From: Heteronotia binoei
Taxonomy: Eukaryota
Assembly: GCF_032191835.1 (NCBI RefSeq)
Contig: NC_083223.1
Coordinates: 63,612,001-63,676,000, forward strand
Direction: 5' to 3'
DNA: 64,000 bases
Below are positions 1 through 50,389 of this stretch, piece by piece (within the stretch, counting starts at the first letter, position 1; every line of letters begins with the position of its first letter). Position numbers and translations under genes: made by a program. The notes under the pieces are model-generated. The model had not been told where the DNA came from and did not search any database. It saw only the letters and a program-made list of their open reading frames with translations.

Positions 1-2
1 AT

Positions 3-1460
3 CGGCCCCGAGACCGTTCAGCCAGCAGGTCACGATCTCCTCTCGGCAAGGACGAAGGCCGATCGCCTCGTGGAGCCCCGTCCCACGTCCCATGGGACCA
101 GAGGCAATGGCAGTATTTGTATGGGGCTTACCCAGTACAACCTCATTACCCATGGCTGCCGCCGCGACAACCCGAATGGGACCAAGCTTCTGAGACATCT
201 TACCGGTCCCGCACGTCTTTTCGCACGGTGAAGACGGCCCCGTCGGCGTCGGTGTCGAAACCCCTAGAACCACGCACGAAGGAGCACGACTTCGCCCCAC
301 CGTTAAAGCCGAGGTCGACCCCGACAGCCCCAGCATCCCCATTGAAGCCGGTGCAGCCATCGGACTTGTCCGACTCCCCGGACGAGTCTCCCAGGTCGCC
401 GGGGGGTTCGTCTCCTGACGGAGGACCTTCGTCGCCGGACGAGCCATCGCCACCGGGAAAGACCTCGGACGAACAGCCGATCTCGCCATCGGAGGACCTC
501 AAGTCCTACGGCGACTTAGTAAAGCGGATGGCTCAAACCCTCTCGCTCCCGACGGTCCAGCCACAACCGGTCGTTACCGATACGGTTTTCGACATCGTGC
601 AACAGGACACTTCCACCGCTGTGGCACTGCCTCTGACCAATGTTATGTTGCAGACTGCCAAGTCCTCATGGGACAAGCCGGCGTCCACGCCTGTGTCCTC
701 TCGCAGGCTGGACCATATGTACAGGATCCAGGAGTCATCAGCAGAGTTCCTGTACGTGCACCCGAGACCGAACTCAGTGGTAGTGTCCTCTTCGTCAAAG
801 GCGAAGAAGACCCATTCCACGCCCCCCGATAAGGAGGGTAGGAAACTGGATGCAATAGGAAGACGGCTTTACACCACAGGCTCACTGGGAGTCAAAGTTG
901 CAAACTACACAGCCTGTATGGGCAGATATCAATATGCCCTATGGGACCAGGTCTCCACCATTCTTGGTTCCATCCCGGAGCAGGCGAAGACCTCACTGAG
1001 AAAGCTGCAAAAGGAGGGCATGGCCCTCGCAAAACAACAGCTGAACTCAGCAAAACACTCGGGGGACACGTGCGCCAAAACATTGACCACTGCTATCGCC
1101 CTCCGCAGACATTCCTGGCTCCGTTCCACGGCACTGCAACACGACACGCAGGCCTATGTGGAGGATCTACCGTTCGATGGCTCGGGATTGTTTAGCTCAA
1201 ACACGGACTCGGTCTTGCAAGAGTTAGACAAAAGTATAAAGACATCTCGGAACCTGGGAGTAACAAGCCCCCGCACTCCAGCCAAGAGACAGTGGCCAAA
1301 GACGTGGCACAAGAAGCCCTACTCAAAGTCGCCAGAGCGGCAATGGCGCTCCAAGCAGCCAGCTTTTCCGCGGCCCCAGTACCAGCAGAAACCTAAGTAC
1401 TCGCCACCCTCTACCCAGGTACCCAGGCAGAAGGGTTCCAAACAAAAGCAGGGCCTTTGA
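3..1460 (+). CDS. DIRS1 ORF1 (gag-like, LAP2alpha-like C-terminal domain), start upstream of window
   Basis: Frame of ORF 117..1460 is open back to position 3; Pro/Ser-rich N-part then HPRPNSVVV...KLDAIGRRLY...AIALRRHSWL...VEDLPFDG..LF, typical of vertebrate DIRS1 ORF1. Confidence 0.9.
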   Translation, partial: RPRDRSASRSRSPLGKDEGRSPRGAPSHVPWDQRQWQYLYGAYPVQPHYPWLPPRQPEWDQASETSYRSRTSFRTVKTAPSASVSKPLEPRTKEHDFAPPLKPRSTPTAPASPLKPVQPSDLSDSPDESPRSPGGSSPDGGPSSPDEPSPPGKTSDEQPISPSEDLKSYGDLVKRMAQTLSLPTVQPQPVVTDTVFDIVQQDTSTAVALPLTNVMLQTAKSSWDKPASTPVSSRRLDHMYRIQESSAEFLYVHPRPNSVVVSSSSKAKKTHSTPPDKEGRKLDAIGRRLYTTGSLGVKVANYTACMGRYQYALWDQVSTILGSIPEQAKTSLRKLQKEGMALAKQQLNSAKHSGDTCAKTLTTAIALRRHSWLRSTALQHDTQAYVEDLPFDGSGLFSSNTDSVLQELDKSIKTSRNLGVTSPRTPAKRQWPKTWHKKPYSKSPERQWRSKQPAFPRPQYQQKPKYSPPSTQVPRQKGSKQKQGL

Positions 1461-1485
1461 CTGCCTCCCGCCCCTGTATGGCCCT

Positions 1486-3348
1486 GTGGACTTGCACAGT
1501 ATCCGGTTGGCACGTTTCCTCCCTGCCTGGGCCCGCATCACGTCGGACCGCTGGGTGCTGTCAATTATTCAACAGGGCTATGGGATAGAGTTTACCAACC
1601 CCCCACCCACCCCGACTTTCGTTTACACCCCTCCTTCGCAAACCCTCCGGGAAGAAGTATGCTCCCTCCTCGACAAGGCCGCGATCGAGAGGGTCCCTAC
1701 GCACCAGCTCCGGCGTGGCTTCTACTCCCGATATTTTGCAGTCCCGAAACGGGACGGGGGCCTTCGGCCAATTATGGACCTACGGGCCTTGAACCGATTC
1801 GTAAGATGCGACAAGTTCAGGATGACAACCCTGCAGTATATCCTCCCGCTGCTGGGACAAGGGGACTGGATGGCCACGCTCGATCTAAAGGACGCATATT
1901 TTCATATATCGATTCATCCCTTCCACAGACAGTTCCTCCGCTTCACAATTGGAGAGGAGCACTTCCAATACAGGGCTCTTCCCTTTGGGCTATGCACGGC
2001 CCCTCGGGTGTTCACCAAGGCGATGGTGGTGATTGCCGCTCACTTGAGACAGCAAGGGGTAACACTCTTCCCGTACATCGACGATTGGCTCCTGGTGGCG
2101 GAGTCCAGGGAGTCCTTGCTGCGGCACATAGAAATCACCCTTGCCCTGGTGGAAGAACTGGGACTCCAAATAAACCAGAAGAAGTCCCATCTCCAGCCCG
2201 CGCAACGCGTGCAATTCATAGGGGCGATATTGGATTCAAGGGAGTGCAAGGCATTCCTCCCTCCAGACCGCGCGAATGCCATCGTGCGAACAGTAGCGGC
2301 TTTCCGGCAGAATCCCGTGGTCTCAGCACGGAAGGTCCAGAGACTGTTAGGACTTATGGCAGCCACCACGGCGGTGCTCCCCTTCGCAAGGCTGAGAATG
2401 CGGACTCTACAGCTTTGGTTCTTGAGGAGCTTCAAATGCAACCTGGAGCCGTACTCCAGACTCCTAACGGTACCGCCGGAGGTGCTGGAGTCCCTAAGCT
2501 GGTGGGGTCAGAAACAGTACCTAGTGGAGGGAGCCCCCTTCCACAAACCAGTACCAGTGCTAACGATCATAACGGACGCATCCCTATGGGGTTGGGGTGC
2601 CCACATGGGAGGAATATGTGTGGGGGACAGGTGGCCGAGTCGCTACAGTCAACAGCACATCAACCTGCTGGAGCTCCTGGCCATCTTCCACGCCATCTTC
2701 TCCTTCCAGACTCTTCTGAAGGGAAAAGCAGTAGCGGTGTTGACCGACAACACCACAGCGGTGGCGTACGTCAACAGGCAAGGGGGGACGGTGTCCCGCA
2801 ACCTTTGCAAATTGGCCATCTCGCTGTGGGAGCTGTGCAGATCGCTGGGGGTCTCCCTACAGGCAGCCCACCTGCCGGGAGTGAACAATGTGCAGGCAGA
2901 TTTCCTCAGTCGCGGAGGAGCCCTGTCTCACGAGTGGGAACTGAACTCAGAGTTCCTGGATCCGGTCTTCCGCAGCTGGGGGACACCGGAGCTGGACGTG
3001 TTTGCTACGAGGCACAATGCGAAGTGCGACCTGTTTTGCTGCAGAGGGGGAGCGGACCCCTTGGCCCTTGGGGACGGTCTCCTAATCCCCTGGACCCACC
3101 ATACAGTGTATCTGTTCCCGCCCATCCCATTGCTAACCAAGGTCGTGCAGAAACTTCTACGGGAGCGCCCACAGGGGATCTTGGTGACGCCATGGTGGCC
3201 GAGACAACACTGGTTCCCCTTGGTCCTACGACTGGCCAAGGGGAGGTATTACCGATTCCCACAGGCCCCGGACCTTCTCCTCTCCTACCAGGGCAGGATC
3301 CTCCATCACGATGTGCCGCACCTCAGGCTGACGGCATGGCGCCTGTGA
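1486..3348 (+). CDS. DIRS1 ORF2: reverse transcriptase - RNase H - methyltransferase-like domain
   Basis: Uninterrupted 620 aa; LDLKDAYFHI, LPFGL, YIDD (2074-2085), RNase H TDAS/ELLAI/TDN/ADFLSR, C-terminal DVFAT...YLFPP. Confidence 0.95.
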   Translation: MDLHSIRLARFLPAWARITSDRWVLSIIQQGYGIEFTNPPPTPTFVYTPPSQTLREEVCSLLDKAAIERVPTHQLRRGFYSRYFAVPKRDGGLRPIMDLRALNRFVRCDKFRMTTLQYILPLLGQGDWMATLDLKDAYFHISIHPFHRQFLRFTIGEEHFQYRALPFGLCTAPRVFTKAMVVIAAHLRQQGVTLFPYIDDWLLVAESRESLLRHIEITLALVEELGLQINQKKSHLQPAQRVQFIGAILDSRECKAFLPPDRANAIVRTVAAFRQNPVVSARKVQRLLGLMAATTAVLPFARLRMRTLQLWFLRSFKCNLEPYSRLLTVPPEVLESLSWWGQKQYLVEGAPFHKPVPVLTIITDASLWGWGAHMGGICVGDRWPSRYSQQHINLLELLAIFHAIFSFQTLLKGKAVAVLTDNTTAVAYVNRQGGTVSRNLCKLAISLWELCRSLGVSLQAAHLPGVNNVQADFLSRGGALSHEWELNSEFLDPVFRSWGTPELDVFATRHNAKCDLFCCRGGADPLALGDGLLIPWTHHTVYLFPPIPLLTKVVQKLLRERPQGILVTPWWPRQHWFPLVLRLAKGRYYRFPQAPDLLLSYQGRILHHDVPHLRLTAWRL

Positions 3349-4356
3349 TTTCGGACAGGGCGCAGTTTGTCATAATGAACGCGCGGAAGGCATCTACGAG
3401 GAAGTCATACGCAGCTAAGTGGGCGAAGTTTGCGGAGTTCGCGGCCAGTCGCTCCGTACCTCCCAGTAGAGCGGGACTGCCCGTGATTTTTGATTTCCTG
3501 ATTGTGCTGCTGGACAAGGGCCTCGCCCAATCGTCCGTGCGGGTTTACCTGGCGGCCATTTCGGCACAACATCAGAATATAGAGGGCCGGTCGGTTTTCA
3601 CGCATCCGGACACAAAGCGGTTCCTCAAGGGCATGACGAGACTGTACCCGGCAGTTCGGAACCCTGCCCCAGCCTGGGACTTGCCCCTGGTCCTGAGGGC
3701 ACTAACGGGAAGACCTTTTGAGCCTATGGCCTCCTGCTCTCCTCACCTATTGGCCTGGAAAACAGCCTTTTTGGTGGCCATCACCTCGGCGAGGAGGGTG
3801 GGGGAGCTGGCGGCGCTGCGATGCCCCCTACCTTAATTTCTCAGCGGATGGGGTGATGCTCCGCCCTGACGTTAAGTTCCTACCGAAGGTGGTATCCCCG
3901 TTTCACCTGAATTCGGAAATATTTCTGCCGGTTTATTTCCCGTTGCCGGCTAATGACTCAGAACGGCGCCTTCACGCCCTGGATGTTAAACGGGCGCTAT
4001 CTTTCTATCTTCACCGCACAAGTCAGTCGCGGAGAGACCCCAGACTGTTTGTATCGTACGCTGGACCCTCCACGGGCCTGCGGATCTCCTCGCAGCGCTT
4101 GTCCAAATGGATTACGGGGGCGATCCGCCTGTGCTACATGCTCCACAAGAGGCCGCTGCCCGGCCCTCTACGGGCTCATTCCACGCGAGCTATGGCAGCA
4201 TCGGCTGCGTTCATGAAGGGAGTGGCCCTGCAGGACATCTGTAAAGCTGCCACATGGGCATCAGCTCACACCTTCGTGACACACTACGCGCTGGACCTGG
4301 GGCAGAGACGAGCTTCCGCTGTGGGCCACGCTGTGTTGCAGTCCGTCTCCTCGTGA
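1659..4356 (+). pseudogene. DIRS1 ORF3 tyrosine recombinase, one frameshift near 3815
   Basis: ORF 1659..3836 ends TSARRVGELAALRCPLP*; ORF 3718..4356 continues CDAPYLNF...FLPKVVS...HSTR (4177-4188)...THY (Tyr 4285-4287); catalytic R, HxxR and Y all present. Confidence 0.9.
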
Positions 4357-4399
4357 TGGACCGTCGCACCCGCCTCCAGGTAGGCTTGAGCTTGCTAGT

Positions 4400-4495
4400 C
4401 TCCCATCAGTGTGATGCACAGAGACCACGAAGAAGATAAACAGGTTTCCTACCTGTAACTGATGATCTTCGAGTGGTCATCTGTGCAGTCACACT
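4400..4495 (+). repeat. DIRS1 internal complementary region (ICR)
   Basis: 4438-4495 is the exact reverse complement of 4699-4756 (58 bp); 4400-4437 resembles 4691-4727 and should pair with the left terminus. Confidence 0.9.
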
Positions 4496-4756
4496 ACCCG
4501 CCCGACCTTCCCCGCTGCTGACGGTCCCTCCTGAGGGGCTAACGTGGCGGTCAGAAGGAACTGGCGGGATGTCCGCTCCTGTCCCAGTGAGCATGCGCGG
4601 GGGGGGGGGGCCCGGGCATGCGCACTGGGACGTCGGCGCGGAAATCCGCAGCTTTTGAAGTTTACCGATCGAGATCGGCGCTGGCGCCTACTCCCATCAG
4701 TGTGACTGCACAGATGACCACTCGAAGATCATCAGTTACAGGTAGGAAACCTGTTT
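4496..4756 (+). repeat. DIRS1 right inverted terminal repeat with 3' extension (inner boundary approximate)
   Basis: GC-rich segment after the ICR, ending in the 58 bp complementary to the ICR. Confidence 0.75.
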
Positions 4757-5111
4757 TTTGCAAGGTTTTTTTAAAAACATATAAAATATTTATATATTAT
4801 TCTGGTCTCTAGTTTCCTGGGAAAGTGTCATGGGTGGTTCTATAAGAGTTGTTCTGTGGTTTCTATTCATAACTATGGTTGCCCATGTATATACACTGTA
4901 CACCTGAGTCTTATAAAAGTTTTCCCCTCTGTCATAAACTACATTTAATATAGAACATGTCATGACATGTTATCTTCTAAATAGTCTACAAGAAGAATAG
5001 CAAAATGGAAGTGATTTTATAATATTAAATATTTTATAAAAGTTGTCATGAACAGGGATGACTTCCCATGATGTTTATACCTCAACAGACACAAAGGAAA
5101 ACTTTTAAGAC

Positions 5112-5258
5112 AAGGCCTCAGATTCAGTGGGAGCTCACAGGAGCACAGCTTCTGAACTTTTCTGAGAGTTCCACCTCCTTGTCCATTGAATAGTATGTGC
5201 AGCTGCATAATAATCCCTGGATGAGCTCCACCACCTATTTTTCTACAAAATGACCCTC
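5112..5258. mobile_element. hAT MITE, short member of the CAGGGGTCATTTTG/CAGGCCTCA family
   Basis: 8-bp TSD TTTAAGAC on both sides; reverse-complement homology to 54294-54462. Confidence 0.8.
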
Positions 5259-5789
5259 TTTAAGACCATCAGTACTCATAGGATTTGAAAATCAGGTGTA
5301 CATTACTTGCTCAAGAATAATATTTTGCATTTATGTACCATTTACAGATGTTAAAAATATTTCATGTACATCTCATTATAATCATAACCCAGTAAAGGTT
5401 AGTATTACCATTCCTGTACTGCAGACAGCAGACTTAGAGAAAATAGCTTGCTTACAGCTACATGGTGGATTGAGTTTGTAACAGAAAAGATTTACCTCAA
5501 GGACTTCTTGGTTCATAGCTCTCCATCATTATGGTGGTATAACAGGTGTGTCCTAAAGAGGCAGGCCCTTTAACAGGATGTTAACATTTCTTAATGCCTG
5601 CATACTTTCTCATCGGGGTTCCACTTATCAGAGGCACTGCTGTGTGCTGGCAGAAGGGTCTCTCTGGGGGTAACAGGTGTGCTGTCCTAAGGAAGTGCCA
5701 CTTCCATTTCTGTCAGCAAATATATATGCCTCCACTGTTCCCTCCTCCAAATGGAACCAACCTAGGTAAGTGCTGCCTCAGGAACGTCT

Positions 5790-6100
5790 TGTTTACAAGG
5801 AGGCAAAGTCAGCCAGCTTTTGAATACTTAAAATCCAGTGTGAATGGGCAAGATGGGTCTTTCTACAAACCTGTTCGTAAAAAAAATGTGAAATCTCAGT
5901 TTGCGGAAAAATGTGAAAAAATTTTTTAGCCATTGGGAGGGTTTTTAAAAGCCAAAAATGATTAAAACTGCCTGTTGCTTTCAGCAACTGGTTCCTTCAG
6001 TGGCTGTTGCTAGGTAACCACATCATTCCAGGCTAGGTTTATGTGAGGAAAAAGGCAGGGAAGGGGGCAGAACCCTTTCCAGGCCTACTTTGGCATCTGG
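5790..6100. repeat. Unclassified interspersed repeat, second copy at about 52880-53160
   Basis: Shared blocks atacttaaa(a)tccagtgt, tctttctacaaac, tcagtggctgttgctagg in both places. Confidence 0.55.
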
Positions 6101-6503
6101 CATGATAACTCATCAGGGCTAGGGTTTCCAGCTCCATATTGGGAAATGTCTGGAGATTTTGTAGTGGAGTCTGAGGAGGTCAGGATTTGGAGATAGGAAA
6201 AGCCTCAGTCAGATATGCCATAGTTTACTCTTCCTCCAGGCAGATACATCACTGTGTCAGGTATAAATCACACCTCTGTGTCCCACCTGAAGCTTGGAAA
6301 CCGGAGGTCTGGAAGGAACCTCTGGTGACCTGATTCCACCCAGCCTGCATGACTCAACTAGGCCCAGCTGCCTGCTACTGATCAGTAGCAGCTATCCTAT
6401 ACAAGCCAGTGTGGTGTTGCAGTTTGATATTAGGTGATCTTGGACCAGTCACATACTTCCATACAGAGTTGATGTGTGAAGAAGAGTAGAAGTTGCTTTG
6501 GGC

Positions 6504-7044
6504 TAGGGATACCAGCCTCCAGGTGGGTACCTGGGGATCCCCAGGAATTAGTTTATCTCCAGACTACAGATATAAGAACATAAGAGAAGCCATGTTGGAT
6601 CAGGCCAATTGCCCATCCAGTCCAACACTGTCACACAGTGGCCACAAGAAAAACAACCAAGTGCCATCAGGAGGTCCACAAGTGGGGCTAGAAGTCCTTC
6701 CACTGTGCCCCCCCCCCAAAGCACCAAGAATACAGAGCATCACTGCCCCAGACAGTTCCAACAATATGCTATGGCTAATAGCCACTGATGGACCTCTGCT
6801 CCGTATGTTTATCCAATCCCCTCTTGAAGCTGGCTATGCTTGTAGCCACAACCACCTCCTGTGGCAGTGAATTCCACATGTGAATCACCCTTTGGGTGAA
6901 GAATTACTTCCTTTTATCCATTCTAATCAGTTCTGGAGAAAATGGATGCTTTGGAGGGGAGGACTCTATGGCAGTGTACCCCACAGAGGTCTCTGGCTCT
7001 CCCCAAATCTCCAGGAGTTTTTCAACCTGGAGCTGGTGACCCTA
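6504..7044. mobile_element. hAT-Blackjack-like MITE (TAGGGTTGCCA-type TIR) interrupted by a CR1 fragment
   Basis: Degenerate TIRs tagggatacca / tggtgacccta; internal ctggagaaaatgg..gctttggagg..ggactctatggc motif shared with other copies. Confidence 0.65.
6571..6926 (-). mobile_element. CR1 LINE 3' fragment
   Basis: Minus strand encodes FFTQRVIHMWNSLPQEVV...FKRGLDK (CR1 ORF2 C-terminus) and ends in a TCTTATGTTCTTAT-type tail. Confidence 0.85.
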
Positions 7045-8229
7045 CCCCCCTCCATCTATGGGGAAAGGTGAAGTGGGCAGGAAGTAAATAAAAATAAATA
7101 ATAGGTGAAGATGGGAGACAGAGAAAAGGTAGGTTGATAAACGGCAAGGAGAGAATGAGGCAGGGAAAGGGGAGAGGATACAGAGCTTGCCAGGCAGGAA
7201 GAGGAAATAGTGTGGGGAGGGTGACAGAAGAAAGTGAGGTCCCACCCAAGTCCTTGATTTCCACTATGCAAGATGGCCTGACCAAGTCGCTAGCACCACA
7301 CACCTGGGCTGCAGTTTCCCTGGTTGGGGGGGGAGGGGATGAGATGCAATCAGTAAGAGGTGTTATTGTTTTGGTTAGGCACTGAGAAAAACAACTTAGC
7401 AATAAGCACAAGAAAAAAATTAACACCCCACCCCTGGCCGTTCACATAAACGACTGCATCTGTACCACCCCATTAACTGCACTGCAGTGGTTTCTCAGCT
7501 CTCTTGAAAAGCATTCTGAGGGGAAATAAACCAAAAGAGAGACCTCTTACTGATTGCATTACAACTATATCGTATTTTATCTATACCATAGTGTTATTGT
7601 TTTGGTTAGGCACAAGAAAAAAATTAGTCCTACTTAAATTCTACGGTAACAAGAAACTAATGATTTGTAATTCAGGAAGCCTTCAAACCTAAAAACTGAT
7701 TGCATTACATCATATTTTATCTATACCACTCATCTGCAGGTATAAAAACCTAGGCAACATAAATGGCATTTTTGATAGCTATAAGTGAAGAACAACTTTA
7801 AACACCTGCAATAAGAAAGTTTGTTTCTAAGAGCTCTAATAAATAAAACACAATACACTGTTCTTACAACAGAGCAGTGATGAGTTATTACAAGTGTTAA
7901 CTATTTTAGTGTAACTAGTGAATTATCTCTTTTTTTGTTGTTAGATTTTGAATCTTGCCCAAATTCTATTTCGCCCTTTGACACCCCACCCCTGGTCGTT
8001 CACATAAATGACTGGATATGAGAATCCACTCACTGCATCTGTACCAGCCCATGGAAAGGCTATGCTGCAGTACAGCCTTGTCTGTCTCTTTACTGCCCCA
8101 AGCCTGCGGTTTATTTTTAATGAGGGTGAGGAGGCCTCTGAGCATGCGAGAGAGTATCTTTCCCCCCCCCCTCGACTCCTTGCCTTATGTCTCTTGGGCC
8201 ACGCAGGGTTCATTACTAGTCAGCGGTGA

Positions 8230-8720
8230 GTTCGGGCACTTTTGTTTTTGCCCCCTGGACAGCTCGAGCACGCAGCGATGACTGGGGCGGGGAGGGCTGC
8301 TTCCCTTCTTTGGCAGCGAGCGACGCGGGTGTCAATCCAGGAGCGGCGCTGTCGCCGCAGCCGGAGGGAACTCTTCCTGGGCCAGTCGCAAAGGCAGCCG
8401 GCCGCCTCTCTCCCCTCGCGCGCCAGGCCCGCTATGGCCCAGGCCAAGATCAGCAGCAGTCTGAGGAGCAGCAGTGGCGGCGAAGCAGCCCAGCAAGCGG
8501 GCGGTGGGCAGATCCGAGGCCGCTTTTCCCGTTCCACTTCCATGGCGGACCGCTCCAGCCGCCTGCTGGAAAGCCTGGACCAGCTGGAACGAAGGTAAGC
8601 TCGGCCGGGTGTGTTGGGGGGGGGGGGGGGGAGGGGGGTTTAGAGACAATGGCTTTTGTCGTGGGGAGGCCGGGGAGCAGCTGCGCTCGGATGAGACGCG
8701 GCTCAACTGCAAGGCTTTTG
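8230..8720 (+). promoter_or_regulatory. BAG2: CpG island / promoter of BAG2
   Basis: Dense CpG, GC-rich region spanning exon 1. Confidence 0.85.
8434..8594 (+). CDS. BAG2: BAG2 coding exon 1
   Basis: MAQAKI...GRFSRSTSMADRSSRLLESLDQLE matches BAG2; donor AG|GTAAGC at 8595, 161 nt, phase 2. Confidence 0.97.
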
Positions 8721-9573
8721 GGGTTTTTTAATTTTGAAATCAAAGTTTTCATTTGGAAACAGAAACACGAGGTTTACTGTTTTTCGCAAGGAGAGGGTGC
8801 TCCTTCTATAGCTCCACCATGACAAATATGATTTTTAAAACACCCACAAGTGAATTCATTCAAAGTTTCCCCTACCCTCGGTGGCAGCCGCATGGGTTTC
8901 CCCGGGGTGAGAAGGGGAATGATTTCGCCTGCTTGGAGACAAGCAGCAGCTTGGCAAGAGGAGCTCGCGAATGCTGACCGTCTTAATGATCATCTCAGAG
9001 AAGCTTTGCATTTGCCAAATATTTCTTAATTCCTTTTGGTCATCTGAGCCAAAGCCAATATGTCTTGCTTGCGGGACTTGCCGTATCTCCTGATGGGCTG
9101 TCAGGACCTGACTGGTGAAAAACAAACAACCGTAATTTCACCATCGCCAGAAGAAACAGTTTAGGCCAGTGTTTTGTGGAGGCTCTGGATTGCATCAGAA
9201 GTGTGCGAGCTGAATAAGAACTTATTTTTAAGTTCAAAAGTTTCACTTACGAAGCACGCCTTTCTTAAATTATCCCTTGTCCTTTTCAATCACACTGCTA
9301 TGTTTACACAGAGCAGCTAAAGGAAGACTGTTTTCAGAAGTTGTTAGGAATGATAAATACAGCGATATAAAAATCCAGCCTGAGGCTGGGAAATTTGACT
9401 GGACTGAGCTGGGTGGAGTTTGGAGCACTACCGCAGCGGAGACACTAGTGCCATTTTTTAAAAAACAAGACATTTTGATATTCTAAAACCAATTTGCAGA
9501 GAGAGGCTACCATGCCAAAAATGACAAAGCCTGTTCTGCAATGCAGTGCTAAACAAAGGGATATACTTCTGAA

Positions 9574-16270: not shown

Positions 16271-16619
16271 CAGGGCTTGCTAAACTGTGGCTCTTTCACA
16301 CGTATTGTGTGGCTCTTGAAACCCCCATCACCCTGTCAGCCAACTTGGAAAAGGCATTTCTCTCTCTTTAAATCNNNNNNNNNNNNNNNNNNNNNNNNNN
16401 NNNNNNNNNNNNNNNNNNNNNNNNNNNNNNNNNNNNNNNNNNNNNNNNNNNNNNNNNNNNNNNNNNNNNNNNNNNNNNNNNNNNNNNNNNNNNNNNNNNN
16501 NNNNNNNNNNNNNNNNNNNNNNNNNNNNNNNNNNNNTCTGATGTTCATGTCTTGGGGCTCTCAAACATCTGATGTTTATTCTATGTGGCTCTTACATTAA
16601 GCAGGTTTGTCCACCCCTG
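16271..16619. mobile_element. hAT MITE, CAGGGGTGGCCAAAC family, spans the assembly gap
   Basis: Reverse-complement homology to 59415-59726 on both sides of the Ns; TSD TATTAGGC/CACTAGGC (6/8). Confidence 0.8.
16375..16537. other. Assembly gap (163 N)
   Basis: Run of N. Confidence 1.
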
Positions 16620-39150: not shown

Positions 39151-41349
39151 CATTTCTCTGCTCTACTGATACTCACAGGGACACAAAATTCACTAATTAA
39201 GAGGAATGATTATGATGACACCTATATATACCGCCTTTGTGTACTGGGTTTCTTCTACTAAATACCACCACATCGCAATTATACATAACTGAAATATCCA
39301 ATTCCCACACCCTAGATTCAACTGAAAATCTGTACAATCCTAAAATCAGAATTATACCCACCTAAATTCATTGAAGTCAATGGGTTTATAAGTAGCAATC
39401 TGTTTTAGGACTGCAGTGTACATTTCCAACTCAATCTGGCCTAGCATTGTTAGAATATTAATTATGTCTATAGAGCTTAAGATAGAGGTGTGGCTATCCT
39501 CCATCCAGTAGCAAAAATACATCTTGAACCCCTATGGGAGAGTCAGGGTCCATTACACCAATGTCAAGAATTTTTGTAGCTCATTGCTCACCAGAAGTAG
39601 GCACAATCAGCACTCAAATTTCAATTATGAACAGCTTTAAAAAAATAGAAGTTAAGACTTTTTGAAGCAATAGCTGAAAAAAAGACTGCAGCAAAAGTTT
39701 TGTTTTCTAACTTGTGCTACATATGCTTGGTTTTTTTTGCAACTGTACTATACAACATTATTTGAAAACACAGGACTATCTGAAACCCAGATTTAAAAGT
39801 AAAAGCTATTGCCATCTACTGTTGCAATTTAAAGTCTCTACAGTAATACATAGTTTATGGTTGCACATTATCTCATTCCAGTAATCTACATGCTATCTAT
39901 TGCTGTCATTTTTCTAGGCACGCACACTCCTATTTGTCAAAAACCCAAAGATACACCCAGATGTCAGTGCAGCTCCTCTCCTCTCCCCTCTCAAAGGATT
40001 TGACCTCATTCCATTCAGTACAATCTGTTGACTCTTTTCCTTCCCCACCCTGTTCTTTCCTTCCAATATCAATTTAATCCCATAAATCCACACTGTGTCC
40101 CTCCCACGCATCCCCTCAAAAAAAAAATCAGCTCCTTCCTACTTCACATATTTTAGCTGTTTTAAGAAACAGGCTCCTATGCCACTATTGATGGACTTAA
40201 GGTAGTGGTTCTTCAGAGTTAGACATAGTCAGGCTCTTCAGGTGAATAAAAACCATTAAAGTCACAACGATCAGGGCAAGTAATGGCAAAAGTTATGTAG
40301 CCCCACTGTGGAGACCAACAGAAAAGGTACACCCCACAGACTTGCAACATGCCCTACACCTTTGTGCTCAGTGCCTACTGCCTACAGAAATGTGCAGGGT
40401 TGGCTTGGTGATATTCTGTGCAGCATGCAGGATGAGCACAATAAATTGTGCTACACATTACAGCCATTGCATAAAAAAGCTATCCTGTGGAGGATGTAGA
40501 ATAGAGACATGCACTACCTTCCCAGCCTCAGGACCTTCCCTACAATAAGATTCTGCAAGTGTGTGCAATGATGATCCAGCTGCTGAGTTGCTAAACCAAA
40601 CAAACTATAACAGATAACAACTACGTACTTGTTGGCAGCACTTCCTGGATACCTTCCCCGCAATGTTATCCACCAACTACATTTACATTATTAAGAGACA
40701 CTGCTGTGTTACCATATATAAATACAACAGATGGACAGTTAGAATCAGATATCATTTTGTACCTGCCAATCCATCCACAAGTTACCTAACCTGAGAGCAA
40801 CCTTTCCCCATTAATTTGCCATTAGCCAATCACATACAAACCATCTCCTTCCAGGTAAGCACCCTATCAAGCCACAGGTACCCACAGCCAAGCAAGTTAA
40901 GTACAGATCCTTCAGCATATCTGAAGGGCTTCCTCAGCCATAGAACATTCAGTCTTCCTTACCAAACTTACCAGAGACACCCCCCCCCCACCCAAATACA
41001 ACATTTACATCAGGAGCCAAACTGGCAGAGGACTCAGCCACAGCCCTTACGAAAACCATAACGGACCAGTGTTTCTGAGCATACACGGACGACCTTCCAT
41101 CACCAATGGGTAACCACCAAAGTCTGAGACTGAGAAAAGCCACAGCCATCCTAAACAGGTTTTCTCAGATCAGAATCCTACCTAGTAGGGCTTACTCCGA
41201 GGAAACTGTTCTTTGGACGGCACTGTAAATCAAACCTTCCAGGCCTTAGCCCGCGAAGCTCCGTTCTGCCCTTATTACAAATTAAGTTTTTCCAACGGCT
41301 GAAGGGAAACCCCCAGTGTTTCTTGGGAAGAGAAGGGCAGAGAAAACAG

Positions 41350-42200
41350 AGCAACATTTTGCAAAGCTCAGCCCTGAACAGCACAGGCGGCGCCTTCTCC
41401 TCTCCCCAGGGCAGGCGCAGCTCCCCCAGGCAGACACCCCCCTTCTCTCCAGCCACGACGCCCGTCTGCACAGGCCATAACCTCCACACCCCACCAGAGA
41501 CCCTCCCAACCGGCACAGAAGCGGCGCCTCGCAACCGTCCGCAGCCCAGCCCCGGCGGTGGCTCACTAACCAGCCGCGTCCCTTGCCAGGTTATCGGCGG
41601 CGGGCGCGTGAGGAGACCGGCAGCCAGGAGAAGCGGAGCCGGCCCAACCCGGACGCACATCCCGGCTCGCTCCCACCTAGCTCTCGTACATGCACACCCC
41701 CGGAAACACCGTCAGGGCCGCGGTGGGACCCGCTTGGGAAAGCAGCCTTCCCGGGCTAGTCTCCGCTCCGCCTCCCTCAGGGACCGAGACGAGAGAGGAA
41801 GGCGAGGCTGCCTTACCGCCGCCGGCACCACCCGTCTGCAGCTGCTGCTCTCCCTCTGTAGGAGCGGGAGCTGCCTCGCTGGCCGGGGTGGGAGACTGAA
41901 GGAGGCGGAGGCAGGATCGCTGCTGCGAGACGCGGGCAAGAAGCGCCGCATGCGATGAGCAACGCGAGGAGAAGGCACAAAGCCCGGCGAGCTCCTGCTG
42001 GTGCTGAAGCGATTCTCCACCCCGGGCTTAAAGGCAAAGAGCGCCGGGGACGCTGCCAGAGCCCACACGACGCGGGCTCATTCGGAAGGACTCGACTGCT
42101 GACCTGACATCTGGGACAGACTTCCAAGACGGCTAGAGGGGACTGTTTCGTCCTTTGGGCAGCGCATGAGGCGCGCTGGTGCTGACCTTAAAGTCACCCT
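41350..42200 (-). promoter_or_regulatory. RAB23: CpG island / promoter of RAB23
   Basis: Dense CpG region 5' of exon 2 on the minus strand. Confidence 0.85.
41817..41990 (-). other. RAB23: RAB23 noncoding exon 1 (TSS approximate)
   Basis: Donor GCG|GTAAGG at 41817/41816 inside the CpG island; exon 2 has an acceptor upstream of its ATG, so an upstream exon is required. Confidence 0.7.
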
Positions 42201-44450: not shown

Positions 44451-47400
44451 CAACTGTTTTCAAACATCATTAAGTGTCTCTTTACTTTCCAATGTTTTTC
44501 AACATGTATTTGAAATTTCTCCCAATCCATCTTAAACTTCTCCAAACCATAGTCCTTTAAGATTCATGTAAGTTTGTCCATTTCACTCCAAGACATAACT
44601 TTTAAAATCCAGTCCCATTTTTCTGGTATTTTATCTTGCTTCCATAGCTGCGCATATAATATCCTTGCAGCTGAAAGTAGATGCCACACAATAGTTCTAT
44701 CTGATTTCGAAAAACTTTCCATTTGTAATCCCAACAAAAAATGCGTCTGGAGATTTCTTAACATCATAACCTAAAATCTTTTATATTTCTTTCTAAATTT
44801 GCCAATATTGTCTTGCCTTTTCACATGTCCACCACATGTGGTAAAAAGAACCTTCATGCTTTTTACATTTCCAACATCTGTCTGACATCTGATTACTCAT
44901 TTTTGCCAATTTCTTAGGTGTCATATACCATCTATATAGCATTTTAAAGCAGTTCTCTTTAATGTTATAACATGTAGATATCTTCATAGAGTTCTCCCAC
45001 AAGTGTTCCCATGACTCCATTTCTATTTCTTTGTTTATATTAATTGCCCATTTTATCATTTGAGATTTAACTACTTCAACTTCCGTAGACCATTTCAATA
45101 AGTTTATAAATTCTTGATATCAATTCGTCATTATCACCAAACAGCATTCCTTCCAATTCTGTTTGTTCTTGTCTTATACCTTCATTTTTAATGTCCTGTT
45201 CCAAGCTCTTAATTTGTTACATTTGAAACCAATTATATTTATAGTCCAATTCTTCTACTGATTTTAGTTCAACTTTCTCACCATGCATCTTTAACAATTG
45301 TTTATATGACAATCACTTCACTTCAGAGATATCTGAATATAATTTTATTACTTCCGTTGGCATAATCCAGAGCGGTTTTCTCTCATCCCCATATCTTTTG
45401 TATTTTAACCATGTATTCAACAAGTTTCTTCTTATATAATGATGTGAAAAAACCCATCCATCTTATTTTCCCCATAATACATATAAGCATGCCAACCAAA
45501 AATATTTCTATGACCTTCTAGTATTAGTAGTTTTCTATTTAATAACGTCATCCATTTTTTAATCCACGCCAAGCATACTGCATCGTGGTATAGCTTTAAA
45601 TCAGGCAATTTGAAACCTCCCCTTTCTTTTGCATCAGTAAAAATTTTCATTTTAATTCTTGTTTTTTTTCCAGCCCACACAAATTCTGAGATCTTCCTTT
45701 GCCATTTACTAAATTGTTTGTAATCCTTCACAAATGGAATTGTCTGAAATAAAAACATAATTCTTGGTAGAACATTCATTTTGATTGCAGAAATTCTGCC
45801 CAGTAAAGACAAGTTCAATTTATTCCATTTTAACAAATCTCCATCAATCTTGCACCAAAGCTTCTCGTAGTTGTTTTTATGCAAATCTATATTTTTCATA
45901 GTAATTTCCACACCCAGATACTTTACGTTTGGAACAACTTTACACTCAGCTACACGTCGTAATTCTTCCTGTTGATTCTTTGCCATAGGCAGTGGCTAGG
46001 TGGCTTAGGCTGAGCGGGCTGAAGCTGAATCCGGCGAAGACAGAGGTCCTTTGCTTGGGTCGCTGCGGCCCGGGAAGGGAAATCCCCCTGCCAGCTTTTG
46101 ACGGCGCGCCGTTGATAGCGTCGAGCAGGGTCAAGAGCTTGGGGGTACTATTGGAGCCTTCACTGACGATGGAGGCTCAGATAGCAGCCACTGCCAAGTC
46201 CGCTTTCTTTCATCTTAGGCGGGCGAGGCAGTTGGCCCCCTTCCTGGAGCGCGACGACCTAGCAACAGTGATTCATGCTACGGTCACCTCGAGGCTGGAC
46301 TACTGTAATGCCCTCTACATGGGGATACCCTTGTGCCGGACCCGGAAACTGCAGCTAGTGCAGAACGCCGCTGCCCGGCTGCTATTAGGGCTCCCAAGAT
46401 GGGAGCACATACGGTCGGGGCTCCGGGACCTGCACTGGCTGCCAGTAACATTCCGAGTCCAGTACAAGGTGTTGGTCATTACCTTTAAAGCCCTATATGG
46501 CCTAGGACCTGCCTACCTTAGAGACCGTCTCTCCCCACACGTTCCCCAGAGAGTACTATGGTCGGGTTCACAAAACCTGCTGGTAATCCCCGGGCCAAAA
46601 GAGGCCCGTCTAAAATCCACCAGGGACCGGGCCTTCTCAATAACGGCACCTTACTGGCAAAGTATGCCGGAGGAGGTGCGGGCCCTGAGGGACCTAGGGC
46701 AGTTCCGCGGGGCCTGTAAGACAGCCCTCTTCCGGCAGGCCTATAACATCTAACTGACAATGAGGATACCTTCTGAATGGAATAAAATGCACATACAGAC
46801 CGCTGGTTTTATTTTAATTGTTTTATTAATTATGGTTTAAATTGTATCTGTAAATGCTTTTAAATTGAATCTGTGTAAATTATTATGTTGTAAGCCGGCC
46901 TGAGACACTTCGGTGAGAAGGGTGGGATATAAGTCTAAATATAAATAAATAAATAAATAATTTTTTACATAAAATTTTCGATTTTTTTTTGTTTATATAA
47001 AAACCTGCCAACTCTCCATATTCTTGTATCTTATAAAGCAGCAATGGTATTACACAAATAGGATTTTCATTGATAAACATTATATCATCTGCAAACGCTC
47101 TGTATTTATAAGAAAAACATTTACTCTCTCTTTTTTTTTCATTTGCCAACCCAGGTTTATTTTCCAGGTTTATTTGCTCCTTCAAAAGATTTCTGATGCA
47201 ATCTTTTAAGATTCCATTCTACTTCTTTATTTAGCAGATGTCTTGGCTGGTTCTGTATATTGTAATCTCCTTATAATTTTCTTTTTCCCTGGTCGCTTTC
47301 TAAGTTCGTTTTCCTTGTTAGCAATCTCTTTTTGGATATCCAACATTTGTTTCTCTTTTGCTCTTTTGTCTTTATTATTCAATGTAATTGAAATGCCTCT

Positions 47401-48257
47401 TATTACAGCTTTATATGCATCCCACACTGTTTGAAATTGTATGTCCTCCTTTTCATTTATTTGAAAGAAAGCTTTAGTTTCTTTTTCTAGAGACGCCACT
47501 ATATCTACTTTCTGTAGTAAATCTTCATTTATCCTCCACCTCCTAGTCTTTTTGGTATACTTTGCCGACCACATTATTGGGTTATGATCTGCCCCCACTT
47601 TAGAAAGAATCTCTATTTTTTTTCGTCATTAGTCCAAGAGCTTTTGTAGCCCATAACATATCAATCCTTGAGAAAGAATTATGTCTTGCTGAAAAAAGGT
47701 GTAATCATGCACTTTAGGATTAAATTTCCTCCAAACGTCTTCCAAACTTTCTTGATTCACTAAGTCAAAAAAAGACTTTGGTAATTTCCCTTCTTTGTTT
47801 CTTTTTCCAGATCTGTCTAAAATATTTTTAACTGTTCCATTAAAATCTCCCATCACCATTATTTGTTCATATACCACTTGGTCCAATTGCTGTACAATTT
47901 CTTTAAAGAAAGAGTCCTTTGCTCTGTTTGGGGCATACAATCTTACTAACAATGTCTTTTTGTCATTTAATGACACTTCCACTGCTACATATCTTCCATT
48001 ATCATCTTTAAAAACCAGTTTTGGGTTAAGTTCTTGTTTTATGTAAAAAATCACTTCCTTTTTTTTTCTTTAGCCAATGAAAACAATTCTGTACCCAATT
48101 GCTTGTTCCATAAAAATTTGTAATCCATTTGTTTAATATGCACTTCCTGTAAACAAATTATATTACATTTTTGCTTTTTAATCCAATGAAATGTAGCCTT
48201 TCTTTTTTGTGGTGAATTTAGTCCATTTACATTCTAAGATAATAATTGGTAATCCAT
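44451..48257 (-). pseudogene. L1 ORF2 (APE endonuclease, RT, CCHC), disrupted
   Basis: MDYQLLS*NVNGLNSP, MGDFNG, DHNP, RAFADD, YLG, CWKCKKHEGSFYHMWWTC; stops, frameshifts, an internal deletion and an L2 insertion; 3' end approximate. Confidence 0.92.
45988..46960 (+). mobile_element. L2 LINE 3' fragment nested in L1 ORF2
   Basis: ORF 45992..46753: LKLNPAKTEVL, RLDYCNAL, KLQLVQNAAARLL, LHWLPV; (TAAA)n tail; splits L1 peptide ILCK|MAKNQQEE. Confidence 0.92.
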
Positions 48258-48270
48258 AATGATTCTTCAC

Positions 48271-49775
48271 TTATTCTGTATCCCCAAAGTCCCTATGTTC
48301 CTCAAAAAATCCCCTCTGGTCTTGGACATTGTTAATTGTAATCCTCTTTCCTTCCAATTCAAAGCTTAGACCTTCTGGTAATATCCATCTGTATCTCAAA
48401 CCTTTGTCATGTAGTTTATCAGTTAATTTCTTGTACAATCTTCTGTCATTTATGACCTTTCTTGGCAACTCTTTCATAATTCTTACTCTGCTTCCTTCTA
48501 CCTCCATTGCTTTTTCAAATTGTTTACTTAGAAGTTTTCCAACTATGTCTCTTGATACAAATCTTACTACCACATCTCTTGGTAGCTTATTTTTTTTTTG
48601 GCATACATTGAATTGACCCTATATATATAGTCATAGGAATAGCTAGATTGGTCAGGGTCCATCTCCAAAAATTCAGCAGTTATTTTTATTATATATGTCT
48701 TCAAGTCAAATTCTTCATTTTCAGGAACTCCTCTCAGAAGTACCTGGTTCTCCATTATCTTACAGTCTTGTAGAACTACTTTCTCCTGCAACTTAGTAAT
48801 CATGGAATCCTGATCTTTTAACTTATTTTCAACTATATGCACTTTATTTAATGTTGCTTGATGTCACGACTCGAGCCTCGGGTAGGCAACGGCTGCTGGC
48901 GTCCCGGCAGTCAGCCAGAACTCTTGCAGCCGGCTGAGGTTTTCAGGGAGGAGCACAGGCGTTATCTTAAACAGTCCAATTAGTCAAAACCATAAATCAG
49001 TCCGAGCCGAGGGATGAGACAGAGAGCGTAAACACAGGAATGCCGAGGGTCGGGTACCCAGAGGGAGCAAAGCCGAATGAAGTCAAATTACCAAAGCAAG
49101 TTCACAGAGCAGAGTCACAGTCCAGAGTTCCGAGGTCCAAGGTCCAAGCCGGGTCAGAAATATGCGGGTTCTCACAGGAGTCAAGAGGGTGCAGAGCGTG
49201 GTCACGTCCCAGGAGGATCGTTCGTTGCCAGCACAGTTTGCCAAAGGGCCAGGATTGCAGATATACTGTGCTGGCTTGTTAACCCATTAGTATGCTGGGC
49301 TTAGATCTCTTCTCCCCCGCATGCGTGCTTCACTCCTTCTGTTTCTAATCTCCTGCCGTCTCCTTTCACGGAGCCGGCTAACAGGTGGTGGAGATTCAGG
49401 AGGGGATGAGCTGGGGCCCGGCGTGGCCTGATCAGTTCCAGGTGGCTCCTGCTGCCGGCTTGCCTCCTCAGGACTTACGTCCAGGGCTGTTAAAGGCGCC
49501 TGCTCTGAGCTAGCAGGTGCTGAGTCAGGGGCAGGCATGACACTTGAGAGTCTTTGGAGATCCTCAATTTCTCTTTTAATTTCTGTCTTCACCGCTTCTG
49601 CACTTGATTTAATGTCTTTTCTTAATTCTTTAATATTTTCAGTTATTAATTCTTTCATCACTTTGACCAATCTGGCCTCCATGGCTTCAAGTTGTTCATT
49701 TACTTTGGCCATCTTTATCTCTTCCAAAGACCTGGCCCTCGGATGAAGCTTCGGTCCCCCCTTATGTTCAGACAT
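48271..49775 (-). pseudogene. L1 ORF1, split by a solo LTR and frameshifts
   Basis: Coiled-coil N-part (49775-49548) then LLRGVPE, YRVNS, PRDVVVRF, RIMKELP, YRWILPEGL. Confidence 0.88.
48862..49542 (-). mobile_element. Gypsy-type solo LTR, 681 bp (orientation tentative)
   Basis: Termini TGTCA...TGACA; perfect 5-bp TSD CTTGA (48857-48861, 49543-49547); CpG-rich. Confidence 0.92.
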
Positions 49776-50389
49776 TACTGTCCTCCCATTATAAATATAG
49801 GCTCCAATGTTGGTCTCTTCAAATCAGAATTGAAACACAGATTCTGAAACACGCCCTTTCCAATGAGCCCAAAATCGCCATTCTAGGAGCTTCCTAGCTC
49901 CAGATATTAATTTTTAAAGTTTTAATTTATTCAAAATGGCATCCGTGAGTTTTCCTGGCTCCTTTTTAAAACTTTTTTTCTTTTCTCTTTGGGCCCACAA
50001 AAATTAATTCTAATTATATAGTCCAATGTGTTTCACCTTATTATAGCAATATCTGCCGGCTCCACCAAGTTTTAAAGTCCCATTCTTCTTTTAAAAAATT
50101 TTCAATTTTTGACCATCCTTTAATGGCCACCAAAGTTTTTCTATGGTTATTTAGTCCTAGAGGGATCCAGGAAGTTGAAGACTTGACCTTCTTTCAATGG
50201 CTCCCTCCTGCTTTTCTTCCTGTTTTACTTCCTGCTTTTCTTGCCACGAAGTCCCGTTCTCTATGATCAGGTATTCTTGTGATGTTTACGCCACTTCCTG
50301 TGAGGTCTTCCAGTGCAGCAACTCTGTGACGATGGGGTTTTTTGCAGAAACAGCAAGTATTCCAAACATAATCTCCTGCCGATCTTACT

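What the first reader, a model, noticed from the sequence alone, without database searches (positions are those of the whole stretch)
1..4756. Young sense-strand DIRS1 with LAP2alpha-like gag at the predicted 3' end of ZNF451
Seen: a near-intact DIRS1 on + ends 3.7 kb upstream of the BAG2 ATG, and its ORF1 C-terminus has the LAP2alpha-type signature. Known: in mammals ZNF451 lies directly upstream of BAG2 on the same strand, and both ZNF451 and TMPO co-opted a DIRS1 ORF1 (LAP2alpha domain) as an alternative exon. Inference: this copy is too young to be the ancestor of the mammalian exon, so it is an independent DIRS1 insertion at the same locus. If it lies in a ZNF451 intron, it could allow a parallel ZNF451-gag fusion.
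Basis: partly seen in the sequence, partly recalled or inferred. Interest (0 to 1): 0.7.

Follow-up and report, generated by a model that had tools for sequence, protein, structure and literature searches.

The report
Young polymorphic DIRS1 retrotransposon upstream of BAG2
This is an ordinary, very recently inserted copy of a DIRS1-type jumping gene in the gap between the ZNF451 and BAG2 genes of Bynoe's gecko; it lies beyond the end of ZNF451's coding sequence, so a repeat of the mammalian ZNF451-gag gene fusion is unlikely here.

Summary
Window 1-4756 (+) is the 3' 4.76 kb of a DIRS1-type tyrosine-recombinase retrotransposon, cut by the window start. It ends exactly at 4756, which is 3,678 bp before the BAG2 ATG (8434). 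ORF1 carries a LAP2alpha-type domain: Pfam 26.1 bits against a cut-off of 25, and a profile match to PDB 2V0X at E 7e-16.

The genome is Heteronotia binoei. The copy is young:
- CpG o/e is 0.78 against 0.10 in the flank.
- ORF1 and the RT/RNase H ORF are open, with one frame break in the recombinase.
- A second assembly copy of the locus (L001, about 99.5% identical) lacks the element precisely at its last base.
- The gecko Paroedura picta is continuous across the site.

The fusion idea is not supported. ZNF451 is upstream on the same strand in other squamates, but the site lies about 3 kb past the ZNF451 stop codon by Paroedura orthology. No ZNF451 coding exon lies between it and BAG2. The eutherian LAP2alpha exon sits upstream of the zinc-finger exons. 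No sequencing run was listed, so RNA was not tested.

One extra result: L001 carries a complete DIRS1 of another family 99 bp away, absent from the window. The scan has 28 DIRS1 notes elsewhere in this genome. Overall this is ordinary.

The parts
1..4756 (+). 3' 4.76 kb of a DIRS1-type tyrosine-recombinase retrotransposon (here 'DIRS-A'); the 5' ITR and the ORF1 start lie off the window
   Evidence: Domain content, ICR/terminus complementarity, GC 0.58 and CpG o/e 0.78 against 0.42 and 0.10 in the flank. Similarity to the second locus copy L001 begins exactly at 4757.
3..1460 (+). ORF1 (gag-like), open to the window edge, 485 codons plus stop
   Evidence: The closest database proteins are reptile DIRS gag ORFs at 31-57% identity.
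762..1220 (+). LAP2alpha-type domain of ORF1
   Evidence: Pfam PF11560 at 26.1 bits (cut-off 25). PDB 2V0X at E 8e-4 and at E 7.3e-16 with the profile of alignment A1.
1486..3348 (+). ORF2: reverse transcriptase (about 1741-2229), RNase H (about 2650-2778) and a C-terminal DIRS-type domain; open, 620 aa
   Evidence: Pfam RVT_1 94.1 bits and RT_RNaseH 20.7 bits. 38% identity over 620 aa to the RT ORF of the second element in L001.
3372..3818 (+). Tyrosine recombinase, N-terminal (SAM-like) part, frame 3
   Evidence: tblastn with the recombinase of the L001 element gives 45% identity. Weak Pfam Phage_int_SAM_1 hit.
3820..4356 (+). Tyrosine recombinase, catalytic part, frame 1; the single frame break lies at about 3818-3820, beside a run of five C
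4403..4495 (+). Internal complementary region; the arm 4438-4495 is complementary to the 3' terminus
   Evidence: 58/58 complementary. The part 4403-4437 is assigned by inference, because the matching 5' terminus is off the window.
4699..4756 (+). 3' terminal repeat arm; last base of the element is 4756
4757..8433 (.). AT-rich, CpG-poor spacer between the element and the BAG2 ATG. It is collinear in patches with the Paroedura ZNF451-BAG2 spacer and holds no ZNF451 coding exon
4851..4855 (+). GTTCT: empty target site of the second DIRS1-like element, which is present only in L001 (L001 745-6388)
8434..8592 (+). BAG2 coding exon 1 (end approximate). Exon 2 lies at about 16.85-16.96 kb and exon 3 runs to 18045

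Best explanation
Window 1-4756 is one recently integrated copy of a DIRS1-like retrotransposon family that is or was very recently active in Heteronotia binoei. It sits in the ZNF451-BAG2 spacer, about 3 kb past the ZNF451 stop codon and 3.7 kb before the BAG2 ATG. By the established DIRS model, such elements are transcribed and reverse-transcribed, and closed into a circle whose junction is templated by the internal complementary region. Their own tyrosine recombinase then inserts the circle at a short core of identity, without a target-site duplication. Shown here: the coding content, the ICR/terminus pairing, the exact 3' boundary, absence from a second copy of the locus and from an outgroup gecko, and undecayed CpGs. 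Inferred: the mechanism, and that the insertion is selectively neutral or mildly deleterious with no relation to ZNF451 function. With its recombinase frame broken, this copy would depend on proteins from sister copies. Its LAP2alpha-type gag is the normal gag of vertebrate DIRS1 elements.
For: - Domains.
- Structure: ICR to terminus 58/58.
- Youth: CpG o/e 0.78 vs 0.10; ORF1 and ORF2 open.
- Second locus copy: L001 (GCA_032191835.1, 231-kb unplaced contig; 123 mismatches in 23,116 aligned bases, 0.53%) matches the window from 4757 on. Upstream of that point it has 645 bp of CpG-poor non-DIRS DNA.
- Outgroup: Paroedura picta reads AAACAAATGGTTTG straight across the site.
- Position: the ZNF451 CDS ends 8.36 kb (Paroedura), 5.53 kb (Podarcis) and 7.69 kb (Tiliqua) before the BAG2 ATG. 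The site maps about 2.98 kb after the Paroedura stop. No CDS is called in L001 1-10000.
- Abundance: 28 DIRS1 notes among 758 scanned windows of this genome.
Against: - The 5' junction is off the window, so a clean two-sided empty site is not shown.
- L001 could be a recent segmental duplicate rather than the other allele. The insertion would still post-date the split.
- Whether the site lies inside the ZNF451 3' UTR is unknown, because UTRs are not in the gene table.
- No RNA data were available.
- A second DIRS1 99 bp away on L001 is hard to credit to pure chance.
Confidence: 0.87

Rival explanations
1. Incipient parallel exaptation: ZNF451 transcripts read through or splice into the sense-strand element, giving a ZNF451-gag (LAP2alpha-type) chimera like eutherian ZNF451-L2a.
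For: The element has the same orientation as ZNF451 in related squamates. ORF1 is open and LAP2alpha-type. Capture of a transposon ORF downstream of a gene has a precedent in SETMAR, as cited in PMC4495291.
Against: - The site is about 3 kb past the ZNF451 stop codon, with no coding exon downstream.
- The eutherian exon lies upstream of the zinc-finger exons.
- The insertion is not fixed.
- The only canonical poly(A) hexamer inside the element is at 2169, within the RT ORF.
- No H. binoei protein of 267-849 aa carries this gag. Longer fusions were not covered by that search.
- No RNA run was listed.
Confidence: 0.03
2. The spacer holds a preferred landing zone for tyrosine-recombinase retrotransposons, or DIRS elements land next to existing DIRS copies, so the position is not random.
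For: Two unrelated DIRS1 families (RT 38% and gag 22% amino-acid identity, no nucleotide similarity) inserted 99 bp apart. Each is absent from the other H. binoei copy and both are absent from Paroedura. Placed at random in the roughly 24 kb shared by the two sequences, a spacing of 99 bp or less has a chance of about 0.8% (my calculation).
Against: - No DIRS lies within 10 kb upstream of BAG2 in five other squamates.
- The two target cores differ (TTT/GTTT vs GTTCT), so there is no shared sequence motif.
- This is a single observation, and a phase-switch in the assembly cannot be excluded without reads.
Confidence: 0.3
3. The element is old and fixed, and L001 lost it by deletion or precise excision.
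For: Tyrosine recombinases can in principle catalyse excision. Only the 3' junction is visible.
Against: The outgroup Paroedura has the uninterrupted site. CpG o/e is 0.78 in a genome whose background is 0.10-0.19. The ORFs are open. The boundary in L001 falls exactly at the last base of the terminal repeat.
Confidence: 0.03

Closest known systems
Vertebrate DIRS1-like retrotransposons (Goodwin & Poulter's DIRS1 group; reptile copies as described in Abascal et al. 2015, PMC4495291)
   Same: It has gag-like ORF1 with a LAP2alpha-type domain, RT/RNase H, a tyrosine recombinase, a terminal repeat with an internal complementary region, and insertion at a short core with no evident duplication.
   Different: It is a new family by sequence: the best gag match in the protein database is about 52% identical. 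The copy is truncated by the window and carries one frame break in the recombinase.
Eutherian ZNF451-L2a and mammalian TMPO/LAP2alpha exons (domesticated DIRS1 gag)
   Same: The domain is homologous (PF11560, 2V0X). The element lies in the neighbourhood of ZNF451, on the sense strand.
   Different: Those are fixed, ancient, spliced 3' exons under purifying selection, lying upstream of the host's downstream exons. This is a full mobile element with RT and recombinase. It is insertion-polymorphic, lies beyond the ZNF451 stop codon, and has no splicing evidence.
Second DIRS1-like element at L001 745-6388 (other copy of the same locus)
   Same: It has the same architecture and orientation and a LAP2alpha-type gag (65.9 bits). 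It is equally young (110-nt ITRs 100% complementary) and equally absent from the other copy.
   Different: It belongs to a different family (RT 38% and gag 22% identity). It is complete in the sequence held, and its core is GTTCT.

Membership tests
DIRS1-like YR retrotransposon | Reverse transcriptase plus RNase H | tested here: met
   RVT_1 at 94.1 bits. RT_RNaseH at 20.7 bits, below its 24.8 cut-off, but aligned throughout with the L001 element.
DIRS1-like YR retrotransposon | Tyrosine recombinase in place of a DDE integrase | tested here: met
   44-45% identity over both halves to the L001 element's recombinase. That recombinase hits Pfam Phage_integrase at 25.8 bits, just under the 27.1 cut-off, and Phage_int_SAM_1. 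The window copy has one frame break at about 3818-3820.
DIRS1-like YR retrotransposon | Internal complementary region matching the termini | tested here: met
   4438-4495 vs 4699-4756, 58/58. Only the 3' terminus can be seen.
DIRS1-like YR retrotransposon | Inverted terminal repeats at both ends | not testable with these tools
   The 5' end lies off the window, and no tool reaches the upstream chromosome sequence.
DIRS1-like YR retrotransposon | Methyltransferase-like domain after RNase H | tested here: inconclusive
   The L001 element gives only a weak Dam hit (16.9 bits vs 28.1). The window ORF2 aligns across that region but has no Pfam hit of its own.
LAP2alpha domain (PF11560) | Score at or above Pfam's gathering cut-off | tested here: met
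   26.1 vs 25 bits, E 6.8e-6.
LAP2alpha domain (PF11560) | Sequence homology to the solved LAP2alpha C-terminal domain | tested here: met
   2V0X at E 8e-4 with the single sequence and at E 7.3e-16 with the profile, covering chain residues 10-231 of 235.
LAP2alpha domain (PF11560) | Same three-dimensional fold | not tested
   No structure was predicted. The sequence evidence was judged sufficient.
ZNF451-L2a-type exaptation | gag-derived exon inside the ZNF451 transcription unit, upstream of the zinc-finger exons | tested here: not met
   The site is about 3 kb after the ZNF451 stop by Paroedura orthology. No ZNF451 CDS lies between the site and BAG2 (PMC4495291).
ZNF451-L2a-type exaptation | Fixed and conserved | tested here: not met
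   Absent from L001 and from Paroedura.
ZNF451-L2a-type exaptation | Spliced ZNF451-to-gag transcript | not testable with these tools

The most novel reading that the evidence does not exclude
The short stretch just 5' of BAG2 and 3' of ZNF451 in Heteronotia binoei is a preferred integration zone for tyrosine-recombinase retrotransposons. Two unrelated, currently mobile DIRS1 families landed 99 bp apart, in the same orientation, on two different copies (probably alleles) of the locus. This would point to regional targeting by vertebrate DIRS elements, through chromatin or DIRS-next-to-DIRS preference, which has been described for Dictyostelium DIRS-1 but not for vertebrates.
Probability: 0.3. 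Interest if true: 0.55.

Novelty: new member of a known kind. Interest (0 to 1): 0.3.

Why it matters
For the question asked, little: a LAP2alpha-type gag is the normal gag of vertebrate DIRS1 elements. This copy is one of many young copies, and it sits outside the ZNF451 coding unit. What is useful is the direct evidence that at least two DIRS1 families are mobile now or were very recently in H. binoei. Both show presence/absence differences between two copies of one locus, with exact boundaries and visible recombination cores. The species complex has sexual and parthenogenetic lineages, where transposon dynamics are of interest. The 99-bp spacing of two independent insertions gives a cheap, testable lead on DIRS target choice in vertebrates.

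Tried and rejected
- Scan notes near this place and for the word 'ZNF451': nothing.
- Other copies of the element in the window: none, so no copy-to-copy divergence was measured.
- ZNF451 last coding exon of Paroedura and Podarcis against window 1-8433 and L001 1-744 by tblastn: no hit.
- Rfam on window 1-9000: nothing.
- DIRS proteins against the BAG2 loci of five other squamates: no DIRS in the spacer. The only hits were a decayed gag fragment 3' of BAG2 in Paroedura and a distant RT in Anolis.
- Look-up of Pogona BAG2 isoform P0031: not on record.
- H. binoei ZNF451 itself could not be fetched. No query of sufficient length was available by reference, and the chromosome place of BAG2 was collapsed with L001.
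- Literature on DIRS in Heteronotia: none found.
- The large representative-protein search and structure prediction were not used, because they were not needed.
- The N run 16375-16536 was left alone, and the matching L001 stretch was neither read nor printed.
Full report
**What is there.**
- Window 1-4756 is GC-rich (0.58 against 0.42 in the flank) and carries the gene set of a DIRS1-type retrotransposon on the + strand.
- ORF1 is open from base 3 to the stop at 1458-1460, so it continues off the window.
- ORF2 (1486-3348, 620 aa) is open, with Pfam RVT_1 at 94.1 bits and an RNase H hit.
- The tyrosine recombinase aligns at 44-45% identity with that of a second element found later. It is read in frame 3 up to about 3818 and in frame 1 from about 3820 to the stop at 4356. 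That is one frame break, beside a run of five C.
- After the recombinase comes the internal complementary region. Its arm 4438-4495 is 58/58 complementary to the terminus 4699-4756.
- The BAG2 ATG is at 8434, 3,678 bp further on. BAG2 exons 2 and 3 follow at about 16.9 kb and 17.6-18.0 kb.

**The LAP2alpha signature.**
- ORF1 hits Pfam LAP2alpha (PF11560) at 26.1 bits, just above the cut-off of 25.
- It hits the solved LAP2alpha C-terminal domain 2V0X at E 8e-4.
- A profile of ORF1 with 19 reptile relatives hits 2V0X at E 7.3e-16 over almost the whole chain, so the homology is real.
- It is also generic. Abascal et al. 2015 (PMC4495291) showed that the LAP2alpha domain derives from the ORF1 of DIRS1-like elements, and that reptile genomes hold hundreds to thousands of such copies.
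- The unrelated neighbouring element described below scores 65.9 bits.

**Whose genome, and what lies upstream.**
- BAG2 exon 3, searched by reference as a single exon, is 100% identical to BAG2 of Heteronotia binoei.
- Looking up that protein returned L001, a stretch of a 231-kb unplaced contig of assembly GCA_032191835.1.
- L001 matches the window from 4757 to 28063 with 123 mismatches in 23,116 aligned bases, 0.53%. It is a second copy of the locus, most simply an unpurged haplotig. A very recent segmental duplicate is the alternative.
- The gene ranges in that tool are CDS ranges, since BAG2 runs from ATG to stop. No CDS is called in L001 1-10000.
- ZNF451 sits directly upstream of BAG2 on the same strand in three relatives. 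Its CDS ends 8.36 kb before the BAG2 ATG in Paroedura picta (1,053 aa), 5.53 kb in Podarcis lilfordi (1,087 aa) and 7.69 kb in Tiliqua scincoides (1,035 aa).
- In Anolis carolinensis and Elgaria the distance exceeds 10 kb.
- RAB23 follows on the minus strand in four of these five loci (Paroedura, Podarcis, Tiliqua, Elgaria); the Anolis locus ends before it.

**Where the element sits relative to ZNF451.**
- The H. binoei spacer is collinear in patches with that of Paroedura.
- The insertion site maps to about L002 4626, roughly 2.98 kb after the Paroedura ZNF451 stop codon and 5.4 kb before its BAG2 ATG.
- The last coding exons of Paroedura and Podarcis ZNF451 find nothing in window 1-8433 or L001 1-744.
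- So the element lies beyond the last coding exon of ZNF451, either in its 3' UTR or in intergenic DNA. It is not in a coding intron.
- The eutherian ZNF451-L2a exon is a large 3' exon whose poly(A) signal prevents inclusion of the downstream zinc-finger exons. It therefore sits early in the gene, far from the BAG2-proximal end.
- 'Same locus' is thus true only as 'same gene neighbourhood'.

**How young.**
- In L001, similarity to the window starts exactly at 4757. The 645 bp before that point are AT-rich, CpG-poor, non-DIRS DNA (GC 0.386, CpG o/e 0.08).
- Paroedura reads AAACAAATGGTTTG straight across the site, aligned to L001 AAACAAATGGTTTG. The empty state is therefore ancestral and the element is a derived insertion, present in one H. 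binoei copy of the locus and absent from the other.
- CpG o/e is 0.78 in the element against 0.10 in the flank and 0.15-0.19 in nearby non-coding DNA.
- Two long ORFs are open.
- If L001 is the other allele, the insertion is younger than the coalescence of two sequences 0.53% apart. That is roughly a million years or so at typical squamate rates. This figure is my inference, with rates taken from memory.

**An unexpected neighbour.**
- L001 carries a complete DIRS1-like element of a different family at 745-6388 (5,644 bp, + strand).
- Its ITRs are 110 nt and 100% complementary, and its ICR lies at 5898-5999.
- Its gag has LAP2alpha at 65.9 bits. It has an RT/RNase H ORF of 753 aa and a recombinase with Phage_integrase and SAM-like hits.
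- It shares no nucleotide similarity with the window's element. At protein level the RT is 38% and the gag 22% identical.
- It sits 99 bp downstream of the first site, between window 4855 and 4856, and is absent from the window. Paroedura is continuous across this site too.
- GTTCT stands at both edges and once in the circle junction spelled by the ICR, as expected for recombination at a short core.
- For the window's element the visible core is TTT/GTTT.
- Two independent young insertions 99 bp apart would be rare by chance: about 0.8% if both were placed at random in the roughly 24 kb shared.
- Five other squamates have no DIRS in the 10 kb upstream of BAG2, so there is no deep, conserved hotspot.
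- Remaining options are a local preference in H. binoei, a DIRS-next-to-DIRS preference with a phase switch in the assembly, or coincidence. Without reads I cannot choose between them.

**Mechanism.**
- By the established DIRS model (Cappello 1985; Goodwin & Poulter 2001, as cited in PMC4495291), the element is transcribed and reverse-transcribed.
- It is then closed into a circle with the ICR as template for the junction, and inserted by its recombinase without a target duplication.
- Everything visible here fits that model. The mechanism itself is inferred, not shown.
- This copy has a broken recombinase frame and would need proteins from sister copies.
- The scan has 28 notes on DIRS1 elements in 758 windows of this genome, so young copies are common and one near any given gene is expected.

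**The fusion idea.**
- A ZNF451-gag chimera would need read-through past the ZNF451 poly(A) site and a usable acceptor ahead of gag, which lies off the window.
- The only canonical poly(A) hexamer inside the element is at 2169, within the RT ORF.
- No H. binoei protein of 267-849 aa carries this gag. Longer fusions were outside that search.
- No sequencing run was listed for the flank, so RNA evidence is lacking either way. I put this reading at about 3%.

**Limits and rules.**
- The 5' junction, the H. binoei ZNF451 gene and the phase of the two elements were out of reach.
- BAG2 was searched by one exon only.
- The N run 16375-16536 was not filled or read from L001.
The frame break is located but not resolved.

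**Verdict.** It is an ordinary new member of a known kind, with a modest extra lead on DIRS target choice.

Noticed in passing
L001 745-6388 (empty site at window 4855|4856): A complete DIRS1-like element of a different family, with all three ORFs open and 110-nt ITRs 100% complementary. It is present only on the second copy of the locus, 99 bp from the window element's site, with GTTCT at both edges and once in the ICR-derived junction.
   Followed up: yes
L001 14860-17430 (window 13296|13297, BAG2 intron 1): A 2.57-kb element with terminal inverted repeats (TAGGGTGGCCA...TGGCCACCCTA) and internal repeats. It is present in L001 and absent from the window, so it is a third polymorphic transposon in about 25 kb.
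   Followed up: partly
window 4380-4443: A 64-nt GT...AG stretch (CCAG|GTAGGC ... AAACAG|G) lies right after the recombinase stop and covers the presumed left half of the ICR. The other family in L001 shows no obvious counterpart.
   Followed up: partly
window 4739-4747; L001 about 6368-6378: Both DIRS elements carry a 5'-splice-site-like motif on the + strand 15-20 nt from their right end (CAGGTAGGA; ACGGTAAGTGA). In a sense-strand copy upstream of BAG2 this could in principle give element-to-BAG2 chimeric transcripts. This was not tested.
   Followed up: no
window 41200-42100: A GC-rich stretch that is probably the RAB23 promoter. RAB23 is annotated on the minus strand after BAG2 in L001 and in four of the five related squamate loci fetched.
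   Followed up: no
window 44800-49800 (minus strand) and 45992-46753 (plus strand): ORFs of LINE-type retrotransposons, with a reverse-transcriptase-like fragment inserted in the opposite orientation at 45992-46753.
   Followed up: no
L002 25080-25287 (minus strand): A decayed DIRS gag fragment 3' of BAG2 in Paroedura picta (38-45% identity to the L001 element's gag).
   Followed up: no
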